A stretch of 64,000 nucleotides of DNA from Octopus sinensis. Its lineage: Eukaryota. Below, piece by piece: positions 8,889 through 62,406 of the stretch (positions are counted from its first letter, which is position 1; the number at the start of each line of letters is the position of its first letter). The DNA is taken from NCBI RefSeq assembly GCF_006345805.1, contig NC_043001.1, forward strand, positions 127,968,001-128,032,000, written 5' to 3'. The position numbers and the translations under genes were made by a program. Below the pieces are notes generated by a model. It was not told where the DNA came from. It made no database searches and saw only the letters and a program-made list of their open reading frames with translations.

Positions 8889-10048
8889 ATGTCACCTCAC
8901 GGAATCAAAGGAACAGGCAAGAAAAATAAGTGCTCATCACTTAGTGTTAATGGACCAAAAATGCTTGCAAAGAAAAAAAGGAAGATTTTAAGTGAGACTC
9001 CTGATGTTGATGTGTCTGGAAAAGCAACCAGTTGGCGTGGTCTTAAAATTGAATCCTCAAATGATCTTAAAGAGAAGATACTGAAGCAGTTAACATGTCC
9101 ATCTCGCCAGTACAAAGGGAGAGATGGCGAAATAGAGCTTCCTCCCAAGAAAAAGCGGAAATTTCAAAACAATGGCAGTGTTGAAACTGATTCAGATGTA
9201 GAGAAAACTAGTCGGAGAAGCAAACTGATGAAAAAACAGTATCTGGAAAAGCCTAGCTCTAAAATGCAAAGATGGAAGAAGCTGGCTGAAGATGCTGAAT
9301 TCTATGGGTCTTCAAATTCTGCAAGCAAAGGCAAAAAGAAAAAGAAATTAATGACTGTAAATTATGATGATGGGGTTTGTGTTTATGATTTGCACACACC
9401 CAGCAAATTGAAGAAAATGAAACGGCAAAAAGGTGCTAATCACATAGTCAACAAAAAGAAGGTTCATATTGGTAAACGTGTCATTACTCCTCACAAGGGG
9501 GGCCGAAAGGAAGCCATGAAACCAAAACTCAATGTCAGCAGCAGTCGTTTAAAACTTTTGTCTAAAAAACAACGAAAGAAGCTTGAGGAAAATTATTCAC
9601 TGCAGATATACAGTGATGTGGAATTGTCAGACAGTGATGTGTCTGCTGATGGACAAAACGTAATTTCAATCAAGAAGGGCAAGTTTTCAATGCCTGACAA
9701 GTGGAGTTATCGACAACTGCTGAGCAAGAAAAAGGCCAAGTCTAAGAAAGAACAGGAATGCAATGTTGGCAAGATAAAAAAGTCAAAGCAGCATCACGAG
9801 CATGTTTTGGAGGATGAAGATTCCTACGACAACATTGAAGAAGCTTCTTCTGATGAAGATTTATCAGAAGTTGATGATGATGACGAGGATGAGGATGAGG
9901 TTGATGATGCTGAAGAGGATGATGATGATGAGGAGGAAGAGGATGATGATGATGATGAGGATGACGACGACGAAGACAGTGAGGCCCAAATGAGTGATGA
10001 AAGACTTGGTGCAGAAAAGAAAAATGTATCAAATCAGAATTTACCCAA
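8889..10048 (+). CDS. NOL9: NOL9 first coding exon: Lys-rich then Asp/Glu-rich disordered N-terminus (exon starts at 8712 with 5'UTR)
   Basis: Acceptor tttattaacAG at 8710-8711; 386 codons + AA, donor AA|GTAAGT at 10049; phase 2 matches exon 42929. Confidence 0.8.
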
Positions 10049-23990: not shown

Positions 23991-25477
23991 GTCAGAATTG
24001 GGTTGGTAAGAATGCTATATTTAGTTACATCTCTTTTATATTCTTACACATTCTGGGTTCAAATCCCATTCAGGTTAACCCACCAACACTGACTTATCAT
24101 TTCTGGCTTCTGGTGTTAAAGAAAGAAATGTTTGTGATAGCCCAGAGCTAATTTGATTACATCCTATTTAAGTAAACCTAGCTAGTCTACTGAAATCTCA
24201 GATAAAGCTAATAACCATATGACATTTCCCCCCTTAGCATCTGTAGACTAGAGGACATTGGAATAGCTTATAAAGTGAATGTGAGGTTTTCTAGTTGGTG
24301 TTAAGTTTGTTTTTTTTTTGTGTGGGGAGGGAACAAGTTGGAGACTTGATATTACAAAAAAACTAAAATATTTTACCATTTTAATGATAATGGTGGTGGG
24401 TTGTAGTAAATTCTTCAAATTAGGTTATTTTTACTGATATGTTTTTTAAGATATTTGTTTTATCATTCTTGGTTTTGATAATATTCTTCACTAAACTTTA
24501 CATTTCATTAATTCATAAAAATAGATCATACAGTAAAAATTACTTTACACTACTGCACACAAAGGTTATGCTAAACTATCATAGCTCCTATGGTATTAAT
24601 AACTCCTTTCCTAATCATTTCTCCAGAACTATCATGCAGTACTTAACCAAGGAAGCTTGATGTTATTTACTACTTGTTAATAAGAAAACTAATTGATTAT
24701 ATATCCATACTTATTTTGTCAAACCTTTGTGTGTGCGTATTCACATGAAGTTATCTCTGCTTCTTCATTTGAGCAATGTTGTTTATATTCTCAGTGAACA
24801 TTACATTCTGAAGCTCTACAGTTTAGAAGTTTAGTGGGATAAAAGAAGAAAAAAATCCCTTACTTGAGAAACCTGCAAGGGTTGGCAACGGGAAGAGTGT
24901 TGAGCCATAAAATACCTCCTGAAATAAGTATCTCTCCAATCTGTGCCAGCATAGAAAAATGAGCAAAAAGGAATTTAGTTGATTTATTCCCAGTTCCTCT
25001 TTTCTCCTTCTTGGGTAGTAGCAATATTTCTCTATTTGGACTATACATGTATGATAGAAAATTTGGAAAAAAAATTCTGCTATATGATTTACTATGACCT
25101 CTATAAATAATTTCACCTTCCAATTCAAGCATTATAAAATTTCACTTTGTATTAAACAAAGAATCTAAATATATTAATCCTTCATCTCTTAGAGGAGACC
25201 ATTAAATAACTGGAGCTGCTTTATTTTAGTAGCTAAGCAAAACTTGCACATAATAATTATGTGAATGTTCTCTTTTACTCATTGGATTACCTTACAATGA
25301 AATCCCTTGGCTTTAGTGATGTATGGAAAAAATATTATGTTAAGCAAATACCTAAGAGCTGTATCTGGTCATTTTAAGGCTTAATAACTTGGGTTTTGAA
25401 AAGCTGCTTTGAGAAGGGCAGTGGGTGTTTAAAGTTTTACGAAGCTGCCATAAAAAATGTGTTATCACTCAGTTATA

Positions 25478-25805
25478 TCATCATCATTTAGCGTCTGTTT
25501 TCCATGCTAGCATGGGTTGGACGGTTTAACTGGGGTCTGTGAAGCCGGAAAGCTTCATTAGGCCCAGTCAGATTTGGCAGTGTTTCTACGGCTGGATGCC
25601 CTTCCTAACGCCAACCACTCCGCGAGTGTAGTGGGTGTTTTTTACGTGCCACCTGCACAGGCGCCAGACAGAGCTGGCACAACGGCCACGAACAGATGGT
25701 GCTTTTACGTGTCACCGGCACGGGGCCAGCCGAGGCTGGCAACGAACACGAACGGATGGTGCTTTTACGTGCCACCGACACGGGGCCAGACAGAGCTGGC
25801 AAACG
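25478..25805 (-). mobile_element. V-domain SINE (family C)
   Basis: (cat)n tail, ggatgcccttcctaacgccaacc core, three tandem subunits. Confidence 0.88.
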
Positions 25806-25990: not shown

Positions 25991-27249
25991 TTGGGTCATC
26001 CCATATACAAAGTGGTTTTTTAATACTTTTATGTTTCAAAATTAAGATAAACAAAGTTCCTTTTTAATCTAAAATATACTCTCCTTCATTTTCTACAATG
26101 TTCTTCCATCTATCTTGTGGACTTGCAAGGCCCTTCTTCCAAACTTCGCTTGTCTGTGATGAAAAATACTCCTCCAGTACTGTTCTGACCTCGTCTACAG
26201 AATTCATATTTTTTTCTGTCCAAATGATTTTGATGACTTGAGGAATAAATAATTAGGTGGGGCAATGTCCAGTGAATATGGTAGTTGGGGCATCGTTTCC
26301 CATTCAAACTGCTCTAGCTTTTGGAATGTCATCTTCGCTATGTGTAGCCGAGCATTAACCTGATGGAAGAATACCTTTCATCTTGAAACCAAAGATAATC
26401 ATTTTTTTCTTCTACTGTTGACTTAAACTGCTCAAGTTGCTTGAAGTAGACTCCTTTGTTATCGTTTGGTTTTGGTTAAAAAGCTCAAAGTGGACTAAAC
26501 CTTATATATCCCACCAAACAGATAACAACACCTTACATAGGTGAAGATCTTCTTTAGCCTGGTGTGCCCCTGTTTCTCCTTTCCCTACCCAGTCTCTTTG
26601 GTGCTTGACATTTTTATAGAGAACCCATTTTTCATCATCAGTCACTATTCGGTCCAAAAAAGGTTCATTTGTGAGATATGATAGCACAGAAGAGCACACA
26701 TTCATTCTTTGTACATGATTAGCCTAGGAAAGTTTGTGAAGAACCCATTGACTCAATTTACTGACTTTTCCGATGGCATGCAGGTGTTGATAAATGGTTG
26801 AATGACCAAATCTAAGCTTCTCTGCTAGTTCCTCAACAGTTTGCAGGACATCCTCGTCGAGCTCTACAGATCTTCCAGGACAAGGCTTGTCTTCAAGGCT
26901 GTAGTTTCTGGCTCAGAATTTCTGGAACCACCGTTGACACTGGCTTATGCTTATTGTCCAATCTCCATATACTGCATTAATATTCCTCACAGTTTTCGTT
27001 GCATTGTTGCCTTTATTGAACTCGTAAAGCAAAATATACCAAATATACTCCTTTGTCACTTCCATTATAGCTTTTGAAAAAATTAGTGTTAAAATTGAAT
27101 TGCACTCTTCAAAACTTGCACTAAGAATAAGGACAAGGTAAAATTACTACCTGCTTTTATAGCAAGTTGATGCAGGTAGTTTATCCTGTCCCCCTCCGAC
27201 TTTTAGTTCATGGAATTGAAAAAACTACATTATTCATGGGATGACCCGA
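25991..27249 (-). mobile_element. Full-length decayed mariner transposon (1259 bp)
   Basis: TIRs ttgggtcatcccat../..atgggatgacccga with TA on both sides; transposase remnant FLDRIVTDDEKWVLYKN..KVLLSVWWD (26502-26705); frames broken. Confidence 0.92.
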
Positions 27250-27311
27250 TATTTTCTTGTAGAGATATATATATGTATGTATGTATATATGTAGATATAT
27301 ATATATGTATG

Positions 27312-27353
<42 letters not shown>

Positions 27354-27665: not shown

Positions 27666-30260
27666 ATGCAAACATTAAAAAATCTTATGTGTACTTTTCA
27701 AGCCCAATTTTTTATTGGCAGTGGAAATTGGGAAATGATTAATGACGAGCGATGTCGAGAAGTGACTCAAGAAGACTATGGTAGTGCCTGGAAACAACAT
27801 GATGGAGACACAACATCAATTGTACTGCATCCATGGCCTCATGGTAACAACTTTCAAGAACAGCAGCCACATTCCCATCAAGTGCTACAGAAAAATAAAC
27901 ATGCTGGTCTTGCGAACACTTCTAATTTGTCAATTATTGGTGGTGTTCTTGACAGTACACTATCAGGACACAACAACCCAGGTATTTCTCATCCTTCGCT
28001 TCAACATTATCATTCAGAACAAGAAAAGCAACAGTCTCAATTTACTGAGAATCACATTCAGGTGCAAGATGGTTCTGTACGGCATTTTGGTGATCAAACT
28101 CAAATATACAATACCTATAATGTTGATGTCAAATCCCAGACTCATATCTCAAATAACCAAACTGATCCCAACCAATCTTCCCAACCATGTCATCTACAGC
28201 AATACACTGACTTAAATCACACTCAGTCTCAACCAAACGGTTCTTCGTTTGGTGCTTCTAAAGTAAAATATTATTACCCTGCAAGCTTTGGTAAAGAAGG
28301 TATTTTAGAGGTTGAAAGGGCTTTGCAACCTGTTCCTCCCGAAGAAGTACTGACTCAAGGTTTCCGCATAAATATAAAGCGATGTGATATGGCTACTTTA
28401 GTTGGGGCCAACTGGCTCAATGATGAAATCATCAATTTTTACATGAATATTATTGTTCAAAGAAGTAAAATAGATGGCTATCCTTCAGTCTACATTCCAA
28501 GCACATTCTTCTTTCCCATGGTTATGAAACGAGGCTATAATGGTGTAAGGCGGTGGACCAAAAATGTAGACATATTTGATCATGATTTAATGCTGATACC
28601 AATTCATTTGGAGAGTGAAAATCATTGGACTCTCATAGCTGTTGATTTCCTTCAGTCTAGTATCTGCTATTATGACAGTTATTTACAAGACAGGGATGAT
28701 GCTATGGATGCAATTCTTAATTATTTGAGAGAAGAAATGAAAACCAAAAAGAATATTGAAATGGACACCAACTGTTGGGTGAAAGTGAATATGAAGAATA
28801 TACCACTTCAAGAAAACATGTCTGATTGTGGTGTCTTCAGTTGTATTTATGCCGAGTACATCAGCCGAGGAGACAAAATGGATTTTACTCAAGAAGATAT
28901 GCCCTATTTCCGACGGAAAATGGTTTATGAAATTCTTAATCATAAAATAGTTAATCACAGTCCAAGGGATCTTGAGAATATGATTTCTGATGACCTTTTA
29001 GACGATATTACTTCCGCAAATGAAAATGGTCATATTCTGACACCAGATATTGCCACAGCCGTGATCCAAAATGGTCTACCTGACAATTTCCAGGGTCCTA
29101 CAAAGGTTAGTGAGGAGGCTATGGGCTTAGCTGCTGTTTCAAAAGACACAGAAGGAGTCAGAGACGTTGAAAAGACCCAGAATGGTTCTACAGGTGGAGA
29201 AATGGAAGAAAAGGCTTCACCTGCAGAAGCAGGTGAAGAAACTAGTAGAAAACATAAAACCAATTTGATCTCTGAAATTAAAAGAATTGTCAGTCTCTTT
29301 GATGATGTCAGTGAGGAAAAGAGAAATCTACTTGAGAGTCAACTCTTTCAGTTGCTCAGAGAAAATCTGCAGAATTCTAACCAGAAAGCCAAGAAATTTA
29401 AAATCAGGCATAATGATCTTGCAAGCATAATGTCAGTGATTGAAAAGCATTCAGGGGAAAATTCTGAGAGTGATGAATTAAATAGTGTCAGTGATGACAG
29501 TGCCAGTAGTAGTACTGTCAGCAGTAGTTCTAGAACTACCACCAGTAGTACTGTTTCAAGTGATAAAGGAATAAAAAGCTCTGATGACACTGAAGTTTCA
29601 AGCCTTTCTGATAATTCAGAAGAGTCAGGTTTGTTTAATATTATGAAGGAAATGGAGAAAATGTTTCTTTCTTTGGCTGCTTTTGTACGAATTATTTGCA
29701 AAACTGACCAAGAACTGTTGAAAGGCAAAGCGGGAGAAGCGTCCAGTCGATCAAATTCTGTGATAAAAGGGATTAGCTACATTACGTCTAAACTAGAAAA
29801 CATAAACCAAAGGTTGAAGAGTCAATCTATTCTGAAAACTGCTGCACAGCAACACATGACATCTCAGCATGACAGAAAAACATCCAAAAAATGTATGTCG
29901 CAACGTTTAGTGATCCAGAAAAAATCGAGGAGAAATGAAAGGGACATTATGAAAACCAAACATTGTTTGAGAAATAGCGTTACATTTTCAAACCAAGTTG
30001 GCAGTGAGGAGGACATCTCCAATGATGAAACTACTGAAGCAAGACTTTTTACCAGTGCAGCAAAAAACCTTGGCATCAGTCTTGAAAGTGGAGCTTATTT
30101 GAAAAAGCTTCACTTACGAAAAAACTTATTGAAAAAATTTCCATTGCCAGCAGATGTATTTGATTTGAATTGCCAGTTGCAGGACAAAGCTCACAAGCAA
30201 CATGCATTCAAAAGCATGGTGCGGTCAGATCATTGTAAAAAAGGAAAAAAGAAAAAGTAA
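27666..30260 (+). CDS. Intronless SENP1-like SUMO protease (Ulp1/peptidase C48) ORF nested in the NOL9 intron; true 5' boundary probably a splice acceptor at 27702 or 27721
   Basis: 864 open codons; domain 28362-28949 has WLNDEIINFYM, VRRWTKNVDIF, PIHL..NHW (His 28623), YYDS (Asp 28674), QENMSDCG (Gln 28809, Cys 28827) and FTQEDMPYFRRKMVYEIL; triad spacing as in SENP1. Confidence 0.93.
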   Translation: MQTLKNLMCTFQAQFFIGSGNWEMINDERCREVTQEDYGSAWKQHDGDTTSIVLHPWPHGNNFQEQQPHSHQVLQKNKHAGLANTSNLSIIGGVLDSTLSGHNNPGISHPSLQHYHSEQEKQQSQFTENHIQVQDGSVRHFGDQTQIYNTYNVDVKSQTHISNNQTDPNQSSQPCHLQQYTDLNHTQSQPNGSSFGASKVKYYYPASFGKEGILEVERALQPVPPEEVLTQGFRINIKRCDMATLVGANWLNDEIINFYMNIIVQRSKIDGYPSVYIPSTFFFPMVMKRGYNGVRRWTKNVDIFDHDLMLIPIHLESENHWTLIAVDFLQSSICYYDSYLQDRDDAMDAILNYLREEMKTKKNIEMDTNCWVKVNMKNIPLQENMSDCGVFSCIYAEYISRGDKMDFTQEDMPYFRRKMVYEILNHKIVNHSPRDLENMISDDLLDDITSANENGHILTPDIATAVIQNGLPDNFQGPTKVSEEAMGLAAVSKDTEGVRDVEKTQNGSTGGEMEEKASPAEAGEETSRKHKTNLISEIKRIVSLFDDVSEEKRNLLESQLFQLLRENLQNSNQKAKKFKIRHNDLASIMSVIEKHSGENSESDELNSVSDDSASSSTVSSSSRTTTSSTVSSDKGIKSSDDTEVSSLSDNSEESGLFNIMKEMEKMFLSLAAFVRIICKTDQELLKGKAGEASSRSNSVIKGISYITSKLENINQRLKSQSILKTAAQQHMTSQHDRKTSKKCMSQRLVIQKKSRRNERDIMKTKHCLRNSVTFSNQVGSEEDISNDETTEARLFTSAAKNLGISLESGAYLKKLHLRKNLLKKFPLPADVFDLNCQLQDKAHKQHAFKSMVRSDHCKKGKKKK

Positions 30261-31019
30261 ACTCTTACACACTCACAAAAAAAAAAAAAAGAAAGAAAAA
30301 AATATCATTTACCTGTCTGTCTACCTTTCTATCATCTGATTTTTCAAATTTTCATTGAGTTACTTTCTCATACTTCATTAATAGGCATACAGAAACACAC
30401 ATATACATATGCATGCATGCATACATACGTAAATACCTGTCAGCATCTTTTATACCTTGCAATCAACTAAATTGCTTATGATAATCTGAAAATACAGCAA
30501 AAGATGTACACAAGTAGTCTAGGTCTGTTCATTTTTATACATGCAGAATTGGAAAACAAAATGAGCAGCTTTAAAATCATTTCAAAGCTCTTTAAATTCA
30601 ATGTTAGTTTTGTCTGTTTTCTCTCTCTCCTATGTCCCATTACCACTGCCTCCGTCGCTGCTGTCGACCAGCAAGATCAACACTTACCACCATTACTCCT
30701 TTCCTTCCACTGTCAGCAACTCTTTGATTTCTTCGTCTTGTTTTGCTCATGAAACCCATCTCTGCTGCTATTGTTGCAATGACATACTGTTCTCTGTTGA
30801 GTTCTTTGTAACAATCAAACCATTAAGCCCACTAAGACAGACATTGTAGGGAAATGTAAAAGATCTGTACCACGTCTCTTTCGTCGTTTGATGCAAAATG
30901 CATGGTAGTTTCTCTTACTCCAAAGACCATTGATGAAACAAAGTCAACTAGATGCTTTTTGATTGGCATATTGTTCATTTACTTTTCATTTATCCGAAAC
31001 TTTTTTTTTTTTGATTCCC

Positions 31020-36525: not shown

Positions 36526-36775
36526 TCATCATCATCATCATCATTTAGCGTCCGTTTTCCATGCTAGCATGGGTTGGACGGTTTAATTAGGGTCTGTGAA
36601 GCCGGAAGGCTTCATCAGGCCCAGTCAGATTTGGCAGTGTTTCTACGGCTGGATGCCCTTCCTAACGCCAACCACTCCGTGAGTGTAGTGGGTGCTTTTT
36701 ACGTGCCAGACGGATCTGGCAAACGGCCACGAACGGATGGTGTTTTTACGTGCCACCGGCACGGGGGCCAGGCGA
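36526..36775 (-). mobile_element. V-domain SINE (family C)
   Basis: (cat)n tail and core near-identical to 25478 copy. Confidence 0.88.
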
Positions 36776-42928: not shown

Positions 42929-43458
42929 GCATATCTGGATAGCTCGATGTGAAGACCAAGCCATTGTAAATCTCAAACACCCATTGGAAAGAAACTTGGC
43001 TGGATTCTGTGAAATCAGTGTTTTATCTGGTTGTATTTGCTTATTAGATGCGAAAATAGTGCCAGATGGACAGTGGCATCCATTATATTCTCCACACGAC
43101 CATACACCTCTCAAGTTGGTGACTCTACATTCGTGTGGTAAGGATGGTCTTGTCATCACCAAAAAGAAAGTTGCATCGATGCTTTCAGAGTCAGACAATT
43201 TTGTAAACAGAATTGATTCTAATTCAGTAATTCTGTTGGTCCGCCGACTTCGGTGGGCTTTCACTGATTACATAAGCACCATTCGTCCATATCAGAGTCT
43301 CTTTCAAGGACTGAAGGAGGAAGACAAAACTACATGTAACCAGACCCTTCAGCCATTTGGTATAAGTTTCATTGCTAAATCAAATATGCCAGATTATACT
43401 TCTTCAGCTGAGGAACAGCATTTTATAGAAAAATGGGAGTCATTAATAAAAAGTAAAG
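42929..43458 (+). CDS. NOL9: NOL9 exon: N-terminal (pre-kinase) domain
   Basis: Acceptor tttttcAG, donor AAG|GTTTGT; 530 nt; GFCEISVLSGCICLL..LYSPHDHTPL resembles NOL9 GICRVTCLYGQVQVF..FSVYTHSCL. Confidence 0.85.
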
Positions 43459-44990: not shown

Positions 44991-45203
44991 GTGGCACGTA
45001 AAAAGCACCATCCAATTGTGGCTGGTGGCACGTAAAAAGCACCCACTACACTCACGGAGTGGTTGGCATTAGGAAGGGCATCCAGCTGTAGAAACATTGT
45101 CAGATCAGACTGGGCCTGGTGCAGCCTTCTGGCTTCCCAGACCCCAGTTGAACCGTCCAATCCATGCTAGCATGGAAGGCAGATGCTAAATGATGATGAT
45201 GAT
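44991..45203 (+). mobile_element. V-domain SINE (family C)
   Basis: gcacgtaaaaagcacccactacactc..aggaagggcatccagc..(gat)n tail. Confidence 0.88.
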
Positions 45204-45808
45204 ATATACATATATATATATGCGTGTGTGTGTGTGTGAGAGAGAGACATAAACACCACAGCTTTTATGCTGCTATAAAACAAAATGTGTTGCAACGATT
45301 GAATGTCTAAAGATGTTGAATAAAATACCTAATTTCACAAAACAGTTTGTATTAGGAAAGGCATCTGCCTGCAGAGTTTTGTCTCAAAAAATTCTTATCC
45401 ACCCCATGCCTGCATGGATAAAACAGATAAAAAAATATAATGAAGATGATCTATTTATATACGCATGTGTGTTGGATTGTAAGTATTAATGTGTCTTAGG
45501 TTTATCTTAGTTTATTTCAAATTTTAGTGGTAATGTCTGCACTAATTATATTGACTCTACCTTTAGTAAAGAGGTAGCAACATATGCCAACATCACATCA
45601 TGCTGAAGACGAGGCAACAAATGTCTAAAACTTTTGATGATGAACTTGGGAAATTTAATCTTTCAAATAGCTTTATGAAAAGTATGATAAAAAGAAACTA
45701 AAACACTGTTGTGCTTGCAATGGGCAAATCACTTCCATTCAAAGATGAGAATTGTATTGTTCAGGCTTCTGAAGTACTTGCCCCTGAATTAATGTGTAAC
45801 TGGCTGAA

Positions 45809-46140
45809 TCATCATCATCATCATTTAACGTCCGCTTTCCATGCTAGCATGGGTTGGACGATTCAACGGGTCTGGGAAGCCAGAAGGCTGTGCGAGGCCC
45901 AGTCTGATCTGGCAGTGTTTCTACAGCTGGATGCCCTTCCTAATGCCAACCACTCTGTGAGCGTAGTGGGTGCTTTTTACGTGCCACCGGCACAGGTGCC
46001 AGATGAGGCTGGCAAACGGCCACGATCGGATGGTGCTTTTTACGTGCCACCGGTGCGGAGACCAGACAAAGCTGGCAATGGCCACAAATCGGATGGTGCT
46101 TTTTACGTGCCACCGGCACGGAGACCAGACGAAGCTGGCG
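45809..46140 (-). mobile_element. V-domain SINE (family C) with three subunits
   Basis: (cat)n tail, core and units at ~45968, 46030 and 46093. Confidence 0.88.
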
Positions 46141-47219
46141 GGATATATAATTCTTAGACCGAATCATTGTGATACAGTATGTGACAAGTTTGCACCTGAA
46201 TTACAGGCACAATTCATCCAAGTCTTCTCTACAGTCTCTATCTGCCCAGTTTCACAACGTGTGGTTCAACCCAAGGAAATAAAAAGTGACATTTGTCTAA
46301 GATATATATAAAAGTGACTTCTGCCTGTTGGACCCCCCCCCCCACCTTCCTGCTGACCAAAGCTGTGAATTTGGCAACTGAAAACTGAAAGAAGCTGTTA
46401 TGTGTGTGCATGGGGGGTTGGAGTGTGTCTGTATATGTTTTTATGTGTGTATATTTGTCTCCTTGCCACAACATTGCATGATAGTTGTAAATCAGATTCA
46501 CTGTCATGTAACTGCTGTCATTTGTTTCTTCTCTTCCATGTAACCATGTCCAGCCATGGGGAAAGAAGGACATTTGACCATAGAAAATCAGACTCAACAA
46601 ATTTCGTCTAACCCATGAATGCATGGAATAGTGGATGTTAAAACGATGATGATGATATATATACTTTGGGAAGCTTTACACAGCTCTCACAGTAAATGAA
46701 CTATTACACTGCTTGCATCTACCCTCTGAAGTCACCCATCTAAACACTAATCATATGTGTATAGCTTAGCTCTGAAAATAATGAGGATGAGGAGAAAAAG
46801 GATGGCAGCAAGAGGAGGAAGAGGATTTCTATTTTTCTAAATATACAAAATTTTCCATTGAGCCGAATATATTGCAGTTTTCGTTTCTTTGGTCATTGAA
46901 AAAGAAAAATGTTCAGTTAGTTTCTGTTCAGTGAAATGAATTTGATAACAACAACAAAAACACTAGAACACTTAGCTTCCTCAGTTAAGACTTAAAAATG
47001 AAACAACACATTCTTCCAGAATATATGCCGGATTTTATTCTATATTGTTGTTGATGAATAGTATTGGTCAGTTTCTGTTTTGTCTTTCCTGTTTTGCTGT
47101 GGTCATGAGAACAAATTATAACAGTTATTTTATATAAATTCTATAAAAAGAGGATTGTTTAAAGAGATAAACCAACAATTAAGGCATATCAACTATATTA
47201 CAATGTGTGTGTGTGTGTA

Positions 47220-47617
47220 TCATCATCATCATCATCGTTTAACGTCTGCTTTCCATGCTAGCATGGGTTGGATGATTTGACTAAGATCTGGCGAACCAGA
47301 TGGCTGCACCAGACTCCAATCTGATCTGGCAGAGTTTCTACAGATGGATGCCCTTCCTGACGCCAACCACTCCGAGAGTGTAGTGGGTGCTTTTACGTGC
47401 CACTGGCACGAGGGCCAGTCAGGCGGTACTGGCAACGGACACCACGCTCAAATGGTGCTTTTTATGTGCCACCTGCACAGGAGCCAGTCCAGCGGCACTG
47501 GCAACGACCTCGCTCAAATGTTTTTTCACATGCCACCAGCACAAGTGTCAGTAAGGCGACGCTAGTAACGATCACGCTCGAATGGTGATTTTTACGTGCC
47601 ACCGGCACGGAGGCCAA
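47220..47617 (-). mobile_element. V-domain SINE (family C), diverged
   Basis: Same tail and core with four degenerate subunits. Confidence 0.85.
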
Positions 47618-48534
47618 CTTGTGTAGCACAATTACACTGGCAAATAAGCATGAATGCCTTTACACATATATAGTTAGAGTAATTATAATAGTTACAATAA
47701 CAGTGCATTAGAACTGACAAGTGGATGAGGTATTGGACTATATATTTCTAGATCATGAGTTCAGTCCTGACTTGAACTCATCAAAAAAACATCATTATTT
47801 AATGCCTGCTTTCCATGCAGGGAACACAGCTATGCCTGCATCTTTGAATTAGACCTTATGTGAGGCAAAATAACAATAACTGCTTAACACTATGAATCTA
47901 AAGTGAAACACTTAACATCCTTGAAAAGCCTCTCAGGGAATGAGGAGATTATTACATTCTCTGATTGCTGTTTGGTATTTTTTTAAAATGGAAAACATCC
48001 CTGCAATAGACTGAAATCTAATCATGGGAGATATTCATTGCTCATTACCTTATTTTTAGAAAACCCAATCTCAGTAATGACCCTTCCTATCTTCTCTCCT
48101 CTGCTGAATTTGTTAAAAGGGTTGACTTGGATGTGAAAGTTCTTATTTTGCTAGATCCAGCATATTTTATCCCTAGTTAAGTGCTGCATCAGTTTTCATA
48201 GTTGAGCTATGAGTACCATTTAGGGTCATAATGTATTGAGTTGTATAGTTTGACTGAAGGAAATTGGAAAACCATATTCTGCCGCTCTGCTTGAAACAAT
48301 ACCCAAAGACCTATGTGAGATGAGCTAATGAGGAAGCTTCTATGTGGTTACTCTGCCTACTAGAAACCTCAGTCAAATTTCACTCATCACATCCTACAAG
48401 CTTATGCAAAGAGGTTTACACTGGACAATGTAGTCCCTGATATACAAAAGACAGGATGATCAGGATTGGAATGCATTTGATCATAGGTCTGCTCAATCAA
48501 AGCTAACCTAGATCTAAATATCAACAACAACCAA

Positions 48535-48850
48535 TCATCATCATCAGTTAACGTCCGTTTTCCATGCTAGCATGGATTGGATGGTTCAACTGGGGTCTGA
48601 GAAGCCAGGTGGCTGTGCCAGGCTCCAGTCTGATCTGGCAGTGTTTCTACAGCTGGATGCCCTTCCTAATGCCAACCACTCTGTGAGTGTAGTGGGTGCT
48701 TTTTATGTGCCACTGGCACAGAGCCAGAGGTGACTGGCAAACGGCTGCGATCTTTTGGTGCTTTTTACGTGTCACTGACACTGATGCCAGTCCGGAGGCG
48801 CTGAGATCAGCCATGTTAGGATGGTGCTTTTTATATGCCACCGGTATGGG
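48535..48850 (-). mobile_element. V-domain SINE (family C)
   Basis: Same tail and core. Confidence 0.85.
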
Positions 48851-50004: not shown

Positions 50005-50492
50005 GTTGTAGTAGTTCTACTATAGGTAAAAGGCTTGAAATTTTGGAGGCAGGGGCTAGTTGAGTGCATTCACCCCAGTGCTCAGCTAGTCCTTTTTTGA
50101 TTGATGCTGAAGGGATGAAAGGCAAAGTCAACCATGGCAGAATTTGAACTCAGAGAGAGTGTAAGGCTAGAAGAAATTTGCTATTGGTTTCTAATTTAGA
50201 CACAAGGCTAGCTATTTTGATGGGAGTAACTTAGTCAAAGTTATTCACCCCAGGATTTGAACTTAGAATCCAAGGGGCTGGAACACACTGCATCATGTAA
50301 GAAAGTAAAACATTATCTTACAATCATGAGTGCAACACTAACCACAAGGCTTGTGACCTAATGGTTAGGGTGTTGCGCTCACAGTCTTTAACCTTTTGGC
50401 ATCCAGTTCAGTTTATAAATATTGTGGTACAAGCAATTCTGAAGTCTCTGTTGTTTACAATACAGTTGTTCTAATACCAACAATAATAATAA

Positions 50493-50655
50493 TGGGTTGG
50501 ACGGTTCAGCTGGGGTCTGGGAAGCCAGAAGGCTGCACCAGGCCCAGTCTGATCTGGCAGTGTTTCTACAGCTAGATGCCCTTCCTAACGCCAACCACTC
50601 CGTGAGTGTAGTGGGTGCTTTTTACATGCCACCGGCACAGGTGCCAGACGAGGCA
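50493..50655 (-). mobile_element. Truncated V-domain SINE inside a disrupted MITE (50388-50808)
   Basis: SINE core without tail; MITE right half continues to gctaaagggttaa at ~50808. Confidence 0.8.
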
Positions 50656-50905: not shown

Positions 50906-50990
50906 AGAATCCAAGAATTTTGTTGTGTGGATCAACAAATACAGGAAAATCTACATTTTGCCGAAGATTGTTAAATATCTGCCTTAATAT
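50906..50990 (+). CDS. NOL9: NOL9 exon with Walker A (NPRILLCGSTNTGKSTFCRRLLN)
   Basis: ttttcAG and AT|GTAAGT; 85 nt, phase 1 to 2; GxxxxGKST as in Clp1/Grc3 kinases; missed by the ORF track. Confidence 0.95.
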
Positions 50991-51295: not shown

Positions 51296-51537
51296 TTACG
51301 TGCCACCGGCACGTAAAAAGCACCAACCGATCGTGGCTGCTGCCAGATTCCCCTGGCACGTAAAAAGCACCCACTACACTCACAGAGTGGTTGGTGTTAG
51401 GAAGGGCATCCAGCTGTAGAAACACTGCTAGATCAGACTGGAGCCTGGTGCAGCCTCCTGGCTTCCCAGACCCCGGTCGAACCGTCCAACCTGTGCTAGC
51501 ATGGAAAATGGACGTTAAACGATGATGATGATGATGA
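51296..51537 (+). mobile_element. V-domain SINE (family C)
   Basis: Core plus (gat)n tail; reverse complementary to 50493-50655. Confidence 0.88.
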
Positions 51538-54529: not shown

Positions 54530-54789
54530 TATCTTTTCTCATTATGCTGGGGAAGCACTGCAAGAAAGTCCTTGCAGGTGCTAAATCTCAGTGTATAGAG
54601 TGGACCAAATTTTGTTTTGCTACAATTGGCTGAATCATTACCTTACAAATTTGTATTCTTGTGTATTAGAAATGATTATTGTAAGGCAGAGAGCTCTCAG
54701 AATCATCGGTCCATTGGACAAAATGCTTCATGACATTTCTTCCTGTTTTTCTGAGTTCAAATCCCACCAAGGTTAATTTTGTCTTGTGC

Positions 54790-55082
54790 CGGTGGCACGT
54801 AAAAAGCACCATCCGATTCGTGGCCATTGCCAGCTTCGACTGGTCTCCGTGCCGGTGGCACGTTAAAAGCACCATCCGATCGTGGCCGTTTGACAGCCTC
54901 GTCTGGCACCTAAAAAGCACCCACAACACTCGCGGAGTGGTTGGCGTTAGGAAGGGCATCCAGCTGTAGAAACACTGCCAGATCAGACTGGGCCTGGCGC
55001 AGCCTTCTGGCTTCCCAGACCCCAGTTGAACCGTCCAACCCATGCTAGCATGGAAAGCGGACGTTAAACGATGATGATGATG
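54790..55082 (+). mobile_element. V-domain SINE (family C)
   Basis: Subunits, core and (gat)n tail. Confidence 0.88.
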
Positions 55083-55292
55083 ATTTTTATGGGTTTGATA
55101 TAATAAAGCACTAGTCAAGTACTGGGTTGATGTAATTAGCTAAGCTTCTTCCCTAAAGAATTGCTTTGTCTTCCGTCAGAATTCAAAATGTTGTTGTTAC
55201 TGTTGATGCTGCTGCTGTTGAATATTGGAAGAGTCATTTGAGAATCAGAAAAATTGCTTTGGGTGTATTTGTTTTGACTCTTTGTTTTGAGT

Positions 55293-55909: not shown

Positions 55910-56007
55910 AAAGAAAAGTGTCTATTTTCTTGACTGTGATCTTGGTCAAACAGAATTCACACCACCAGGCTGTGTATCCTTGAGTTTGGTGAAAGATTAT
56001 GTTCTAG
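55910..56007 (+). CDS. NOL9: NOL9 exon with Walker B (VYFLDCDLGQTEFTPPGCVSL)
   Basis: ttattccAG and G|GTAAGC; 98 nt, phase 2 to 1; DxGQxEFTPPG is the Clp1/NOL9 signature. Confidence 0.96.
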
Positions 56008-56426
56008 GTAAGCTATGTGTATAAAAATATTTCTAATTGTATTGAAATGTTCCATAATTCCAAACCAAATTATTGGTTGTATATATTGTTGTATCCTTCA
56101 GTTGGTGAACATTTCCACTCTTTGCCTCTTGCCACTTGACTGATAAGACTGAATAGAAATGGTATTTTATTTTGCAAAGTGAAAGCTAGATTATCAACCA
56201 CATGCTCATAAGTTCAAACTTTATTGCAGTCATTGGATTGTTTCCTTCACTTTGCTTACTTTGACTAAACAGAAAAAAAAAAATGGGCAAGTTCCAGTTT
56301 TGTTTCATGATTGAGTGTCAAGCCAGGAATTCACAGCCTTTGGTAGTTTAAAAGCTCTCTTTTACTGGATGGGAATAACTGTTTTATAAATGATTCACCT
56401 CAGGTTTTGAAGAGAGAGGTAAACCA

Positions 56427-56800
56427 TCATCATTGTTGTTTAACGTCCGCTTTCCATGCTGGCATGGATTGGATTGTTTGACTGAGGGCTGGCAACCCAG
56501 AAGGCTGCATCAAGCTTCAATCTGTTCTCGCAAAGTTTCTACAGCTGTATGCCCTTCCTATCACCAACCACTCCGAGAGTGTAGTGGGTGCTTTTTACGT
56601 ACCACCGGCATAGAGGCCAATCAGGCAGTACTGGCATTGATCATGCTTGAATGGTGCTTTTTACGTGCCATCAGCATGGGATGCAGTCAAGTGGCACTGG
56701 CAATGACCATGCTTGAGTGGTGTTTTTTACTTGCCACTAGCATGAGTGCCAATCAGGCAGTACTGGCATTGGCCACAACAGTGGCTTCACTTGATTCAAC
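56427..56800 (-). mobile_element. V-domain SINE (family C), diverged
   Basis: aacgtccgctttccatgctggcatgg tail, core and subunits. Confidence 0.8.
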
Positions 56801-58454: not shown

Positions 58455-58488
58455 GCCCACCATTCTGTCACCAAAAAGAACCCATTTA
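58455..58488 (+). CDS. NOL9: NOL9 microexon (GPPFCHQKEPI)
   Basis: ttttcAG and TA|GTAAGT; 34 nt, phase 1 to 2; matches NOL9 GPPFTH. Confidence 0.93.
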
Positions 58489-59855: not shown

Positions 59856-59992
59856 TAATATTTTTGTGGGTGATATCACACCTGAATCCAGTGCTAACCA
59901 TTACATGATCTGTATTCGCAATGTTATTCATTTCTACCTGAGATTATCTCCACAATTACCTTTGGTCATTAACACAATGGGCTGGATTAAAG
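59856..59992 (+). CDS. NOL9: NOL9 exon (NIFVGDITP..PLVINTMGWIK)
   Basis: tttccAG and G|GTTGGT; 137 nt; matches the conserved PLIVNTMGW motif. Confidence 0.95.
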
Positions 59993-62248: not shown

Positions 62249-62406
62249 GACCTGGGAAACAGATGCTTGATGGCATACTTAATTTAATCACTCCAGACCA
62301 GGTTGTTTACCTTTATTCACCTAAAATAAAATTAGAGCCTAAGGAACTGCAGCCTTCTGTTGTTGGTCAGAACCCATGGAATTTTCCTGGAGAGAAAAAT
62401 GAACTT
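62249..62406 (+). CDS. NOL9: NOL9 exon (GPGKQMLDGILNLITPDQVVYL...); gene continues beyond the window
   Basis: ttttacAG and CTT|GTAAGT; 158 nt, phase 1 to 0; resembles NOL9 LIRLLSPSHVVQ; no stop reached. Confidence 0.9.

What the first reader, a model, noticed from the sequence alone, without database searches (positions are those of the whole stretch)
28362..28949. Intact intronless SENP1-like gene nested same-strand in a NOL9 intron (probable retrogene)
Seen: 2.6 kb open in AT-rich DNA where every nearby transposon is shattered; the catalytic His/Asp/Gln/Cys are kept at SENP1 spacing; there are no introns; an A-rich run follows the stop (30277-30302). Established: the catalytic domain of vertebrate SENP1 spans several exons. 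Inference: a retroposed SENP1-type segment now under purifying selection, with local changes (HLESENHW insertion, YYDSYLQD instead of YYDSMGG) that may alter SUMO-paralogue or substrate preference.
Basis: partly seen in the sequence, partly recalled or inferred. Interest (0 to 1): 0.75.

Follow-up and report, generated by a model that had tools for sequence, protein, structure and literature searches.

The report
SUMO protease exon sharing NOL9's start
In octopus, squid and cuttlefish, one gene starts with a shared first exon and then splices either to the ribosome-assembly kinase NOL9 or to a single large exon encoding a SENP1-type SUMO protease. The finding is therefore an old gene fusion, not a free-standing intronless retrogene.

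Summary
The open frame is real: 27666-30260, 864 codons, Octopus sinensis chromosome CM016863.1. It holds a SENP1/2-type C48 domain with His/Asp/Gln/Cys intact.

It is not an intronless gene. The coding exon starts at an acceptor at 27722. It is spliced in frame to an exon at 8889-10048 (386 aa, basic then acidic), giving the RefSeq protein LOC115212363 (1232 aa).

That same first exon, with the same donor and phase, also splices to NOL9 exons from 42929 onward (930 aa). In a decapodiform species, transcripts of both kinds share 1377 nt of 5'UTR plus exon 1 at 99.6% identity and diverge exactly at the donor.

The layout is conserved in O. bimaculoides, a third octopod genome and decapodiform transcripts.

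dN/dS is 0.02-0.035 for the catalytic domain and 0.18-0.28 for the C-terminal extension.

Canonical octopus SENP1 has 18 coding exons, with five introns inside the homologous region. A retroposed origin is therefore plausible but unproven. The A-run after the stop is Octopus-specific and is not a poly(A) relic.

Most likely function, inferred only: a nuclear or nucleolar SUMO protease co-regulated with NOL9, recalling mammalian SENP3 in the rixosome.

The parts
8889..10048 (+). Shared first coding exon. It runs from the ATG at 8889 to the donor CCCAA|gtaagt, phase 2. It encodes 386 aa plus 2 nt. Residues 1-305 are basic (26% K+R, pI 10.1) with KKKRK at 28 and 87 and KKKKK at 149. Residues 306-386 are an acidic tract (59% D+E).
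   Evidence: tblastn of P0001. Sequence. The spliced CDS translates exactly to P0001. The NOL9 CDS starts at the same coordinate. Composition.
27700..27721 (+). 3' end of the intron before the SENP-like exon: aagcccaattttttattggcag. These 22 nt are identical in octopods and a decapodiform, while the rest of the intron does not align.
27722..30260 (+). SENP-like alternative 3'-terminal coding exon, 2539 nt including the stop. Its first base, T, completes the split codon AA|T (Asn387). It encodes residues 387-1232 of LOC115212363.
27723..28262 (+). Linker rich in Q, N and H, residues 388-567. It is predicted disordered and poorly conserved.
28263..28997 (+). SENP1/2-type C48 catalytic domain with conserved flanks, residues 568-812. 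Codons: Trp618 28413-28415, His688 28623-28625, Asp705 28674-28676, Gln750 28809-28811, Cys756 28827-28829.
   Evidence: Pfam. PDB sequence matches. AlphaFold pLDDT above 90. Foldseek TM 0.94-0.96 and rmsd 1.0-1.3 A to SENP1/2. Codons.
28998..30257 (+). C-terminal extension, residues 813-1232. It has no homology to SENP1. Predicted long helices are separated by Ser-rich acidic linkers. Conserved blocks include FPLP..FDL and the tail RSDHxKxGKKKK.
30277..30302 (+). A-rich run 17 nt after the stop. It is specific to the genus Octopus and is not a conserved feature.
42929..43458 (+). NOL9 coding exon 2 (Cupin_NOL9 N-terminal domain). The acceptor is tttatttttcag|G. The first base completes AA|G (Lys), the same phase as the SENP-like exon.
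50906..50990 (+). NOL9 exon with the Walker A motif GSTNTGKS
55910..56007 (+). NOL9 exon (VYFLDCDLGQTEFTPPG)
58455..58488 (+). NOL9 34-nt microexon (PPFCHQKEPI)
59856..59992 (+). NOL9 exon (FVGDITPESS...INTMGWIK)
62249..62406 (+). NOL9 exon (GPGKQMLDGILNL...). The remaining roughly 200 codons of NOL9 lie beyond the end of the window.

Best explanation
The ORF is the alternative 3'-terminal exon of a two-product locus.

Architecture (shown):
- Transcription starts upstream of 8889.
- The 386-aa first coding exon (8889-10048) has one donor.
- That donor joins either the acceptor at 27722 or the acceptor at 42929. Both acceptors keep the reading frame.
- Splicing to 27722 ends the mRNA inside NOL9 intron 1. 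The product is 1232 aa: basic/acidic N-terminal region, disordered Q/N/H linker, SENP1/2-type catalytic domain, 420-aa helical and Ser-rich extension, Lys-rich tail.
- Splicing to 42929 continues through the NOL9 exons. The product is the 930-aa polynucleotide 5'-kinase NOL9.
- The two products are mutually exclusive for any one transcript. They share a promoter, a 5'UTR and an N-terminal module.
- The arrangement predates the split of octopods and decapodiforms.

Origin (inferred, about 0.6): a SENP1-type mRNA, probably 5'-truncated, was retroposed in sense orientation into NOL9 intron 1. It gained a splice acceptor and later lost its original stop.

Activity (inferred, about 0.75): an active SUMO-specific cysteine protease.

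Cellular role (inferred, about 0.35): the shared basic N-terminal exon carries nuclear or nucleolar targeting. The protease would then act where NOL9 acts, on SUMOylated pre-60S or rixosome factors, much as SENP3 does in the mammalian rixosome.
For: Architecture in O. sinensis:
- tblastn places P0001 residues 1-386 at 8889-10046 and residues 385-1232 at 27714-30257.
- The CDS 8889-10048 plus 27722-30260 translates exactly to P0001.
- The gene tables give a NOL9 product whose CDS starts at the same coordinate as the SENP-like CDS. It is 930 aa in O. sinensis and 933 aa in O. bimaculoides.
- Both acceptors accept phase 2.

Transcripts:
- P0003 (SENP type, 1248 aa) and P0212 (NOL9 type, 948 aa) have identical first 389 residues.
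- Their contigs come from run series SRR241894xx. They match over 1377 nt at 99.6% and diverge at the donor TCAAA|.
- Cuttlefish NOL9 transcripts P0206 and P0208 (950 aa) carry the same kind of N-terminus.

Conservation:
- The exon is intact in a third octopod, inside NOL9 intron 1.
- dN/dS against that octopod, at dS 0.68: exon 1 0.23, linker 0.23, catalytic domain 0.035, extension 0.28.
- The catalytic domain is 88-89% identical between octopus and decapodiforms.

Protease:
-.
- Of about 57 catalytic-domain columns that are at least 95% conserved in 42 canonical SENP1/2 sequences, only Gly->Met/Leu at 753 and Leu->Ile at 796 differ.

Origin: canonical SENP1 has 18 coding exons. Introns follow residues 529, 597, 623, 649 and 681. 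None is present here.

Role:
- Exon 1 has KKKRK and KKKKK motifs and an acidic tract.
- The human NOL9 N-terminal tail holds a proven nucleolar localisation signal (bioRxiv 10.1101/647073).
- SENP3 and NOL9 are both rixosome subunits. SENP3 controls the nucleolar residence of LAS1L and PELP1 (PMC3279398, PMC12292926).
Against: - No enzymatic, localisation or interaction data exist.
- Direct spliced-transcript evidence comes from decapodiforms. For Octopus it rests on RefSeq models.
- Unspliced contigs exist that carry the exon with upstream intron sequence (L004-L007, P0199). An internal promoter or intron retention is therefore not excluded.
- The NJ tree does not place the clade next to cephalopod SENP1 (4% bootstrap).
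- No homology to SENP1 survives outside the catalytic domain.
- No poly(A) relic or target-site duplication survives. Retroposition is parsimony only.
- Gly753->Met/Leu, three residues before the nucleophile, and the 2-aa insertion before the catalytic His could change activity or specificity.
- Exon 1 is not homologous to the human NOL9 signal. Its basic part is found only in cephalopods.
- In mammals SENP3 is recruited through PELP1, not through NOL9.
Confidence: 0.72

Rival explanations
1. It is an autonomous nested retrogene. A separate transcription unit inside the NOL9 intron would have its own promoter and start codon, and the exon 1 junction would be a minor or artefactual isoform.
For: - An in-frame ATG lies at 27666, upstream of the acceptor.
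- Contigs from at least four decapodiform runs (L004-L007) and an octopus contig (P0199) carry the exon contiguous with upstream intron sequence.
- RefSeq lists it as a gene separate from NOL9.
Against: - The ATG at 27666 is not conserved. In the decapodiform the called start is a GTG placed by an ORF caller.
- The 22 nt of the acceptor are identical across coleoids, while the rest of the intron does not align.
- A spliced transcript exists.
- Exon 1 is under purifying selection.
- The split-codon arrangement AA|T versus AA|G is conserved.
- The unspliced contigs may be genomic reads or pre-mRNA.
Confidence: 0.12
2. It is an old DNA-level paralogue of SENP1 that lost its introns, or an exon-shuffled duplicate, rather than a retrocopy. 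It may be older than cephalopods.
For: - The clade is 48-54% identical to every canonical SENP1.
- It falls outside the invertebrate SENP1 group in the NJ tree.
- No poly(A) relic or flanking duplications remain, and there is no homology outside the domain.
Against: - Losing five or more introns at once is most simply explained by a cDNA intermediate.
- Full-length relatives were found only in coleoids, among 5.8 billion proteins.
- A long stem branch followed by 88-89% conservation fits rapid change after the fusion.
Confidence: 0.2
3. The domain is no longer a SUMO protease. It would be a binding module, or a protease for another ubiquitin-like protein.
For: - Gly->Met/Leu at 753 lies three residues before the Cys, in a column invariant in 42 canonical sequences.
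- A 2-aa insertion sits directly before the catalytic His, and 'MGG' is replaced by 'YLQ' after the catalytic Asp.
Against: - The triad, the oxyanion Gln and both clamp Trp residues are kept.
- All other highly conserved columns are kept.
- dN/dS of 0.02-0.035 extends to the active-site residues.
- The predicted fold superposes on SENP1/2 at about 1 A.
Confidence: 0.15
4. It is a transposon-borne Ulp1-like protease, or a gene-model chimera with no biological meaning.
For: C48 domains do occur in some DNA transposons (own knowledge). The window is full of repeats.
Against: - It is single copy and at the same position in three octopod genomes.
- It is most similar to cellular SENP1/2.
- Both isoforms are seen as independent transcript assemblies.
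- It is under strong purifying selection.
Confidence: 0.02

Closest known systems
SENP1/SENP2 (Ulp1-branch SUMO proteases, MEROPS C48)
   Same: - The catalytic domain is 46-54% identical.
- The His-Asp-Cys triad, the Gln and the Trp clamp are kept.
- The predicted fold has TM 0.94-0.96.
   Different: - It is a separate, coleoid-only clade.
- The domain lies mid-protein, followed by a conserved 420-aa extension.
- There is no SENP1 N-terminal homology.
- It has a 2-aa insertion before His, Gly->Met/Leu before Cys, and YLQ in place of MGG.
- It is encoded in one exon instead of six.
- Its N-terminus is borrowed from NOL9.
SENP3, the SUMO protease subunit of the mammalian rixosome (PELP1-WDR18-TEX10-LAS1L-NOL9-SENP3)
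   Same: Both link a SENP-family protease to NOL9 and ribosome biogenesis. In mammals the link is membership of one complex (PMC3279398, PMC12292926). Here it is a shared gene, promoter and N-terminal exon.
   Different: - The octopus domain is SENP1/2-like: E 1e-60, against 2e-36 for SENP3.
- Mammalian SENP3 is a separate gene recruited by a PELP1 motif.
- Any physical association in cephalopods is untested.
Host-retrocopy fusion genes such as TRIM5-CypA (TRIMCyp) in primates and jingwei in Drosophila (own knowledge)
   Same: An intron-free coding segment derived from another gene lies in a host gene on the same strand. It is spliced in frame to upstream host exons, and the host still makes its own product.
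   Different: - It is much older, predating the octopod-decapodiform split, so the hallmarks of retroposition are erased.
- The captured enzyme and the host enzyme belong to the same pathway in mammals.
NOL9/Grc3 polynucleotide 5'-kinase
   Same: The host gene has Cupin_NOL9, CLP1_P (Walker A GSTNTGKS) and NOL9_C domains.
   Different: Cephalopod NOL9 carries a 386-aa basic/acidic N-terminal exon with no detectable homologue outside cephalopods. That exon doubles as the N-terminus of the protease.

Membership tests
Peptidase C48, SENP1/2 type | Match to the Ulp1/SENP catalytic-domain profile above the curated threshold | tested here: met
   PF02902 scores 134.2 bits against a cut-off of 20.7. 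SENP1/2 chains match at E about 1e-60.
Peptidase C48, SENP1/2 type | Catalytic His-Asp-Cys triad, oxyanion Gln and the two Trp residues that clamp the SUMO Gly-Gly tail | tested here: met
   W618, H688, W689, D705, Q750 and C756 align to SENP1 W465, H533, W534, D550, Q597 and C603.
Peptidase C48, SENP1/2 type | Ulp1 fold | tested here: met
   AlphaFold pLDDT is above 90 over the domain. Foldseek gives TM 0.94-0.96 and rmsd 1.0-1.3 A to SENP1/2. This is a prediction, not a solved structure.
Peptidase C48, SENP1/2 type | Catalytic domain at the extreme C-terminus, as in SENP1/2/3/5 | tested here: not met
   A conserved extension of 420 aa follows the domain.
Peptidase C48, SENP1/2 type | Orthology to SENP1 | tested here: not met
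   A canonical SENP1 orthologue exists separately (P0023). The clade does not group with it (4% bootstrap).
Peptidase C48, SENP1/2 type | SUMO processing or deconjugation activity | not testable with these tools
   Needs an enzyme assay.
Processed retrogene | Absence of the parent's introns across the homologous region | tested here: met
   Canonical SENP1 has introns after residues 529, 597, 623, 649 and 681. None is present here.
Processed retrogene | An intron-containing parent elsewhere in the genome | tested here: met
   P0023 lies on CM016868.1 with 18 coding exons over 35 kb.
Processed retrogene | Poly(A) remnant and target-site duplications | tested here: not met
   The A-run after the stop is specific to the genus Octopus. 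No flanking duplications can be expected at this age.
Processed retrogene | Copy nests within the parent's lineage in a tree | tested here: inconclusive
   The NJ tree shows a long stem branch and unresolved placement.
Processed retrogene | Intronless, self-contained transcription unit | tested here: not met
   It is spliced to an exon 17.7 kb upstream.
Host-retrocopy fusion gene (TRIMCyp / jingwei kind) | Captured coding segment inside a host intron, same strand, spliced in frame to the host's upstream exon | tested here: met
Host-retrocopy fusion gene (TRIMCyp / jingwei kind) | Host gene still makes its own product from the same 5' exon | tested here: met
   NOL9 products of 930, 933, 948 and 950 aa carry the same N-terminus.
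Rixosome-associated SUMO protease (SENP3-like role) | Physical association with PELP1/LAS1L/NOL9, and nucleolar localisation | not testable with these tools
   Only circumstantial: a shared N-terminal exon with NLS-like motifs, and the mammalian precedent.

The most novel reading that the evidence does not exclude
Coleoid cephalopods built a dedicated nucleolar, rixosome-linked SUMO protease by capturing a SENP1-type retrocopy inside the NOL9 gene. The ITS2 kinase and the desumoylase would then share one promoter and one N-terminal targeting module, and they would be traded against each other by splice and polyadenylation choice. This would be a genetic hard-wiring of the SENP3-NOL9 partnership that mammals achieve through protein-protein contacts.
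Probability: 0.3. Interest if true: 0.78.

Novelty: new variant of a known kind. Interest (0 to 1): 0.6.

Why it matters
- It shows how an enzyme domain can be grafted onto the targeting exon of a functionally related gene and kept for a very long time. In that respect it is an old counterpart of the young TRIMCyp fusion.
- It gives a natural experiment on the link between SUMO deconjugation and 60S ribosome maturation. Isoform choice at one locus would set the ratio of kinase to desumoylase.
- It corrects annotation. RefSeq lists the product as 'uncharacterized'. The cuttlefish NOL9 model lacks exon 1. A third octopod genome does not call the protease at all.
- Cephalopod NOL9 has a long basic N-terminal extension. 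That qualifies a published suggestion that such extensions are unique to vertebrates.

Tried and rejected
- The word-indexed protein search with exon 1 returned only P0121. A search with concatenated NOL9 exons did not return the octopus protein itself. The gap was closed through cluster members and an exhaustive profile search.
NOL9 exons were found instead from a Walker-A pattern and tblastn.
- The Biopython bootstrap timed out. It was redone with numpy distances.
- BLASTP of the linker, the extension and exon 1 against the SENP1 N-terminal region found nothing better than E about 3.
- tblastx of the extension against the 2 kb downstream of SENP1 found nothing. The idea that the extension is a translated former 3'UTR ending in a poly(A)-derived Lys tail therefore stays speculative.
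- The first AATAAA lies 1161 nt after the stop, so the 3' end is not mapped.
- The journal version of the Nol9 localisation paper is not held. The preprint was used.
- The transposon-protease and model-artefact readings were rejected, as set out under the rival explanations.
Full report
**1. The observation**

The + strand has an open frame at 27666-30260 (864 codons) in DNA of about 35% GC.
- It matches Pfam Peptidase_C48 at 134 bits against a cut-off of 20.7.
- It matches the crystallised catalytic domains of human SENP1 and SENP2 at E about 1e-60. SENP3, SENP5 and Ulp1 follow far behind.
- His, Asp, Gln, Cys and both clamp tryptophans are in place.
- 'HLESENHW' is a two-residue insertion relative to octopus SENP1 'HLEMHW'. 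'YYDSYLQD' replaces 'YYDSIGG'.
- An A-rich run follows the stop.

**2. Whose gene it is**

The window is Octopus sinensis chromosome CM016863.1. The ORF is 100% identical to RefSeq XP_029637096.1, 'uncharacterized protein LOC115212363 isoform X1'. That protein is 1232 aa, not 864.

tblastn places residues 1-386 at 8889-10046 and the rest at 27714-30257.
- The upstream exon ends CCCAA|gtaagt at 10048.
- The ORF region has an acceptor ttattggcag|T, so the exon starts at 27722.
- The split codon AA|T reads Asn.
- Joining 8889-10048 to 27722-30260 reproduces the RefSeq protein exactly.

The gene therefore has a 17.7-kb intron, and the first 18 codons of the ORF are intron. 'Intronless' is wrong for the gene. 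It is right for the catalytic domain.

**3. The host gene**

The gene table for the locus lists a second product of 930 aa with Cupin_NOL9, CLP1_P and NOL9_C domains. Its CDS starts at the same coordinate as the protease CDS. O. bimaculoides shows the same pair, 933 and 1235 aa.

Downstream on the + strand I found these NOL9 exons:

| Exon | Coordinates |
|---|---|
| Cupin domain | 42929-43458 |
| Walker A | 50906-50990 |
| VYFLDCDLGQTEF | 55910-56007 |
| 34-nt microexon | 58455-58488 |
| FVGDITPESS | 59856-59992 |
| GPGKQMLDGILNL | 62249-62406 |

The rest of NOL9 lies beyond the window. The acceptor at 42929 (tttatttttcag|G) takes the same phase as the one at 27722, giving AA|G, Lys. One donor can therefore feed either acceptor in frame.

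**4. Independent transcript evidence**

- The 90% cluster of the Sepia pharaonis NOL9 protein contains 950-aa products from 3.7-3.9 kb transcript contigs. They begin 'MSPHGIKGSSKK...GLSK' and continue into the NOL9 body.
- An exhaustive profile search with exon 1 found only four strong hits among 1.84 billion representatives:
  - the SENP-type P0003 (1248 aa);
  - a NOL9-type P0212 (948 aa);
  - an octopod NOL9, P0213 (930 aa);
  - a fragment.
- P0003 and P0212 have identical first 389 residues.
- Their contigs come from the same run series. They match over 1377 nt at 99.6%, covering the 5'UTR and exon 1. They part exactly at the donor: TCAAA|TGGAGATTGG against TCAAA|CCGCCAGTG.

This shows a common promoter and first exon with two alternative 3' bodies. 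A gene-model artefact would not produce this pattern.

**5. Conservation**

A third octopod genome (GCA_054771915.1) has an 852-codon open frame in its NOL9 intron 1. It has the same acceptor and the same C-terminal HCKKGKKKK, although no gene is called there.

| Region | dN/dS vs O. bimaculoides | dN/dS vs third octopod, dS 0.68 |
|---|---|---|
| Exon 1 | 0.47 | 0.23 |
| Linker | 0.60 | 0.23 |
| Catalytic domain | 0.022 | 0.035 |
| C-terminal extension | 0.18 | 0.28 |

- The counts are small in the O. bimaculoides comparison.
- Between octopus and decapodiforms the catalytic domain is 88-89% identical, and conserved blocks run through the extension.
- Introns are 84-89% identical between the two Octopus species. 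The block around the exon is 96.6% identical.
- The last 22 nt of the intron are identical in octopods and a decapodiform, while the rest of the intron does not align.

**6. Origin**

Canonical octopus SENP1 (P0023, another chromosome) has 18 coding exons over 35 kb. The region homologous to the new exon is split by introns after residues 529, 597, 623, 649 and 681. None is present here, so a cDNA intermediate is the most economical explanation.

Four things weaken that inference:
- The long A-run after the stop is present only in the two Octopus species.
- No homology to SENP1 survives outside the domain.
- Every canonical SENP1 is 48-54% identical to the clade.
- An NJ tree gives 100% support for the clade but leaves its position unresolved, with 4% support for a sister relation to cephalopod SENP1.

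I rate retroposition at about 0.6.

**7. The protein**

- The AlphaFold model gives pLDDT above 90 for the catalytic domain.
- The Q/N/H linker is predicted disordered.
- The extension has three long helical segments (pLDDT 55-82) separated by Ser-rich acidic linkers.
- Foldseek superposes the domain on SENP1/2 at TM 0.94-0.96 and rmsd 1.0-1.3 A.
- Of about 57 catalytic-domain columns that are at least 95% conserved in 42 canonical sequences, only two differ. One is Gly753->Met/Leu, three residues before the nucleophile. The other is Leu796->Ile.

An active SUMO protease is the most likely reading. The changes near His and Cys leave room for altered specificity.

**8. Likely role**

- Exon 1 is 26% Lys+Arg over residues 1-305, with KKKRK at 28 and 87 and KKKKK at 149. 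An acidic tract of 59% Asp+Glu follows. This is the make-up of nuclear and nucleolar targeting regions.
- In human cells the N-terminal tail of NOL9 holds a proven nucleolar localisation signal that also carries LAS1L into the nucleolus (10.1101/647073).
- In mammals NOL9 and the SUMO protease SENP3 are both subunits of the rixosome.
- SENP3 removes SUMO from LAS1L and PELP1 and keeps them nucleolar (PMC3279398; PMC12292926; PMC11976907).

I therefore propose that the cephalopod isoform is a SUMO protease delivered to the same compartment as NOL9 and expressed from the same promoter. Each transcript would yield one product or the other. This step is inference. The cephalopod exon is not homologous to the human signal, and mammalian SENP3 is recruited through PELP1, not through NOL9.

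**9. Novelty**

The protein is annotated but unnamed. I found no paper on it. It is a new architectural variant of the SENP family and a very old example of a host-retrocopy fusion.

Noticed in passing
window 45701-46320; also about 1-190, 25477-25805, 36528-36775, 45021-45203(-), 47222-47616, 48534-48845, 50492-50654, 51299-51535(-), 54785-55085(-), 56422-56737: A SINE-like dispersed repeat of about 300 nt with internal subrepeats of about 63 nt. It has at least 14 copies in both orientations and fills the NOL9 introns. It translates to the recurring 'LTSAFHASMGW...DALPNANHS' pseudo-ORFs.
   Followed up: partly
window 58455-58488: A 34-nt NOL9 microexon (PPFCHQKEPI) with AG/GT boundaries. tblastn gave only a weak extended match there; the exon was placed with a peptide-pattern search.
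   Followed up: yes
L016 22091-24586 (GCA_054771915.1, BAAFZT010000005.1): The SENP-like exon is intact (852-codon open frame) in this third octopod genome, but no gene is called for it there. This is an annotation gap.
   Followed up: yes
P0122 (Acanthosepion pharaonis GRC3, CAE1264540.1) compared with P0206/P0208: The deposited cuttlefish NOL9 model (562 aa) lacks the roughly 390-aa first exon seen in 950-aa transcripts of the same cluster. It starts with 19 unrelated residues and is probably mis-modelled.
   Followed up: partly
P0212 residues 390-422 (L012-L015): In one decapodiform the NOL9 isoform has an extra segment of about 33 aa (RQCEKQQ...QKIKQ) between exon 1 and the Cupin exon. It is absent from octopods and from the cuttlefish transcripts, and is probably an additional small exon.
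   Followed up: no
L004-L007 (runs ERR129213xx, ERR12945500), P0199: Contigs of near-identical length (4902-4904 nt) from several runs carry the SENP-like exon with 1.98 kb of unspliced upstream sequence. They could be genomic reads, retained intron or an internal start site. This was not resolved.
   Followed up: partly
window 27230-27350: A compound (TA)n/(TATG)n microsatellite lies about 400 nt upstream of the SENP-like acceptor.
   Followed up: no
window 8889-10048, compared with bioRxiv 10.1101/647073: The Nol9 localisation paper proposes that a basic N-terminal extension of NOL9 is unique to vertebrates. Cephalopod NOL9 has a much longer basic/acidic N-terminal exon with no detectable homologue outside cephalopods.
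   Followed up: partly
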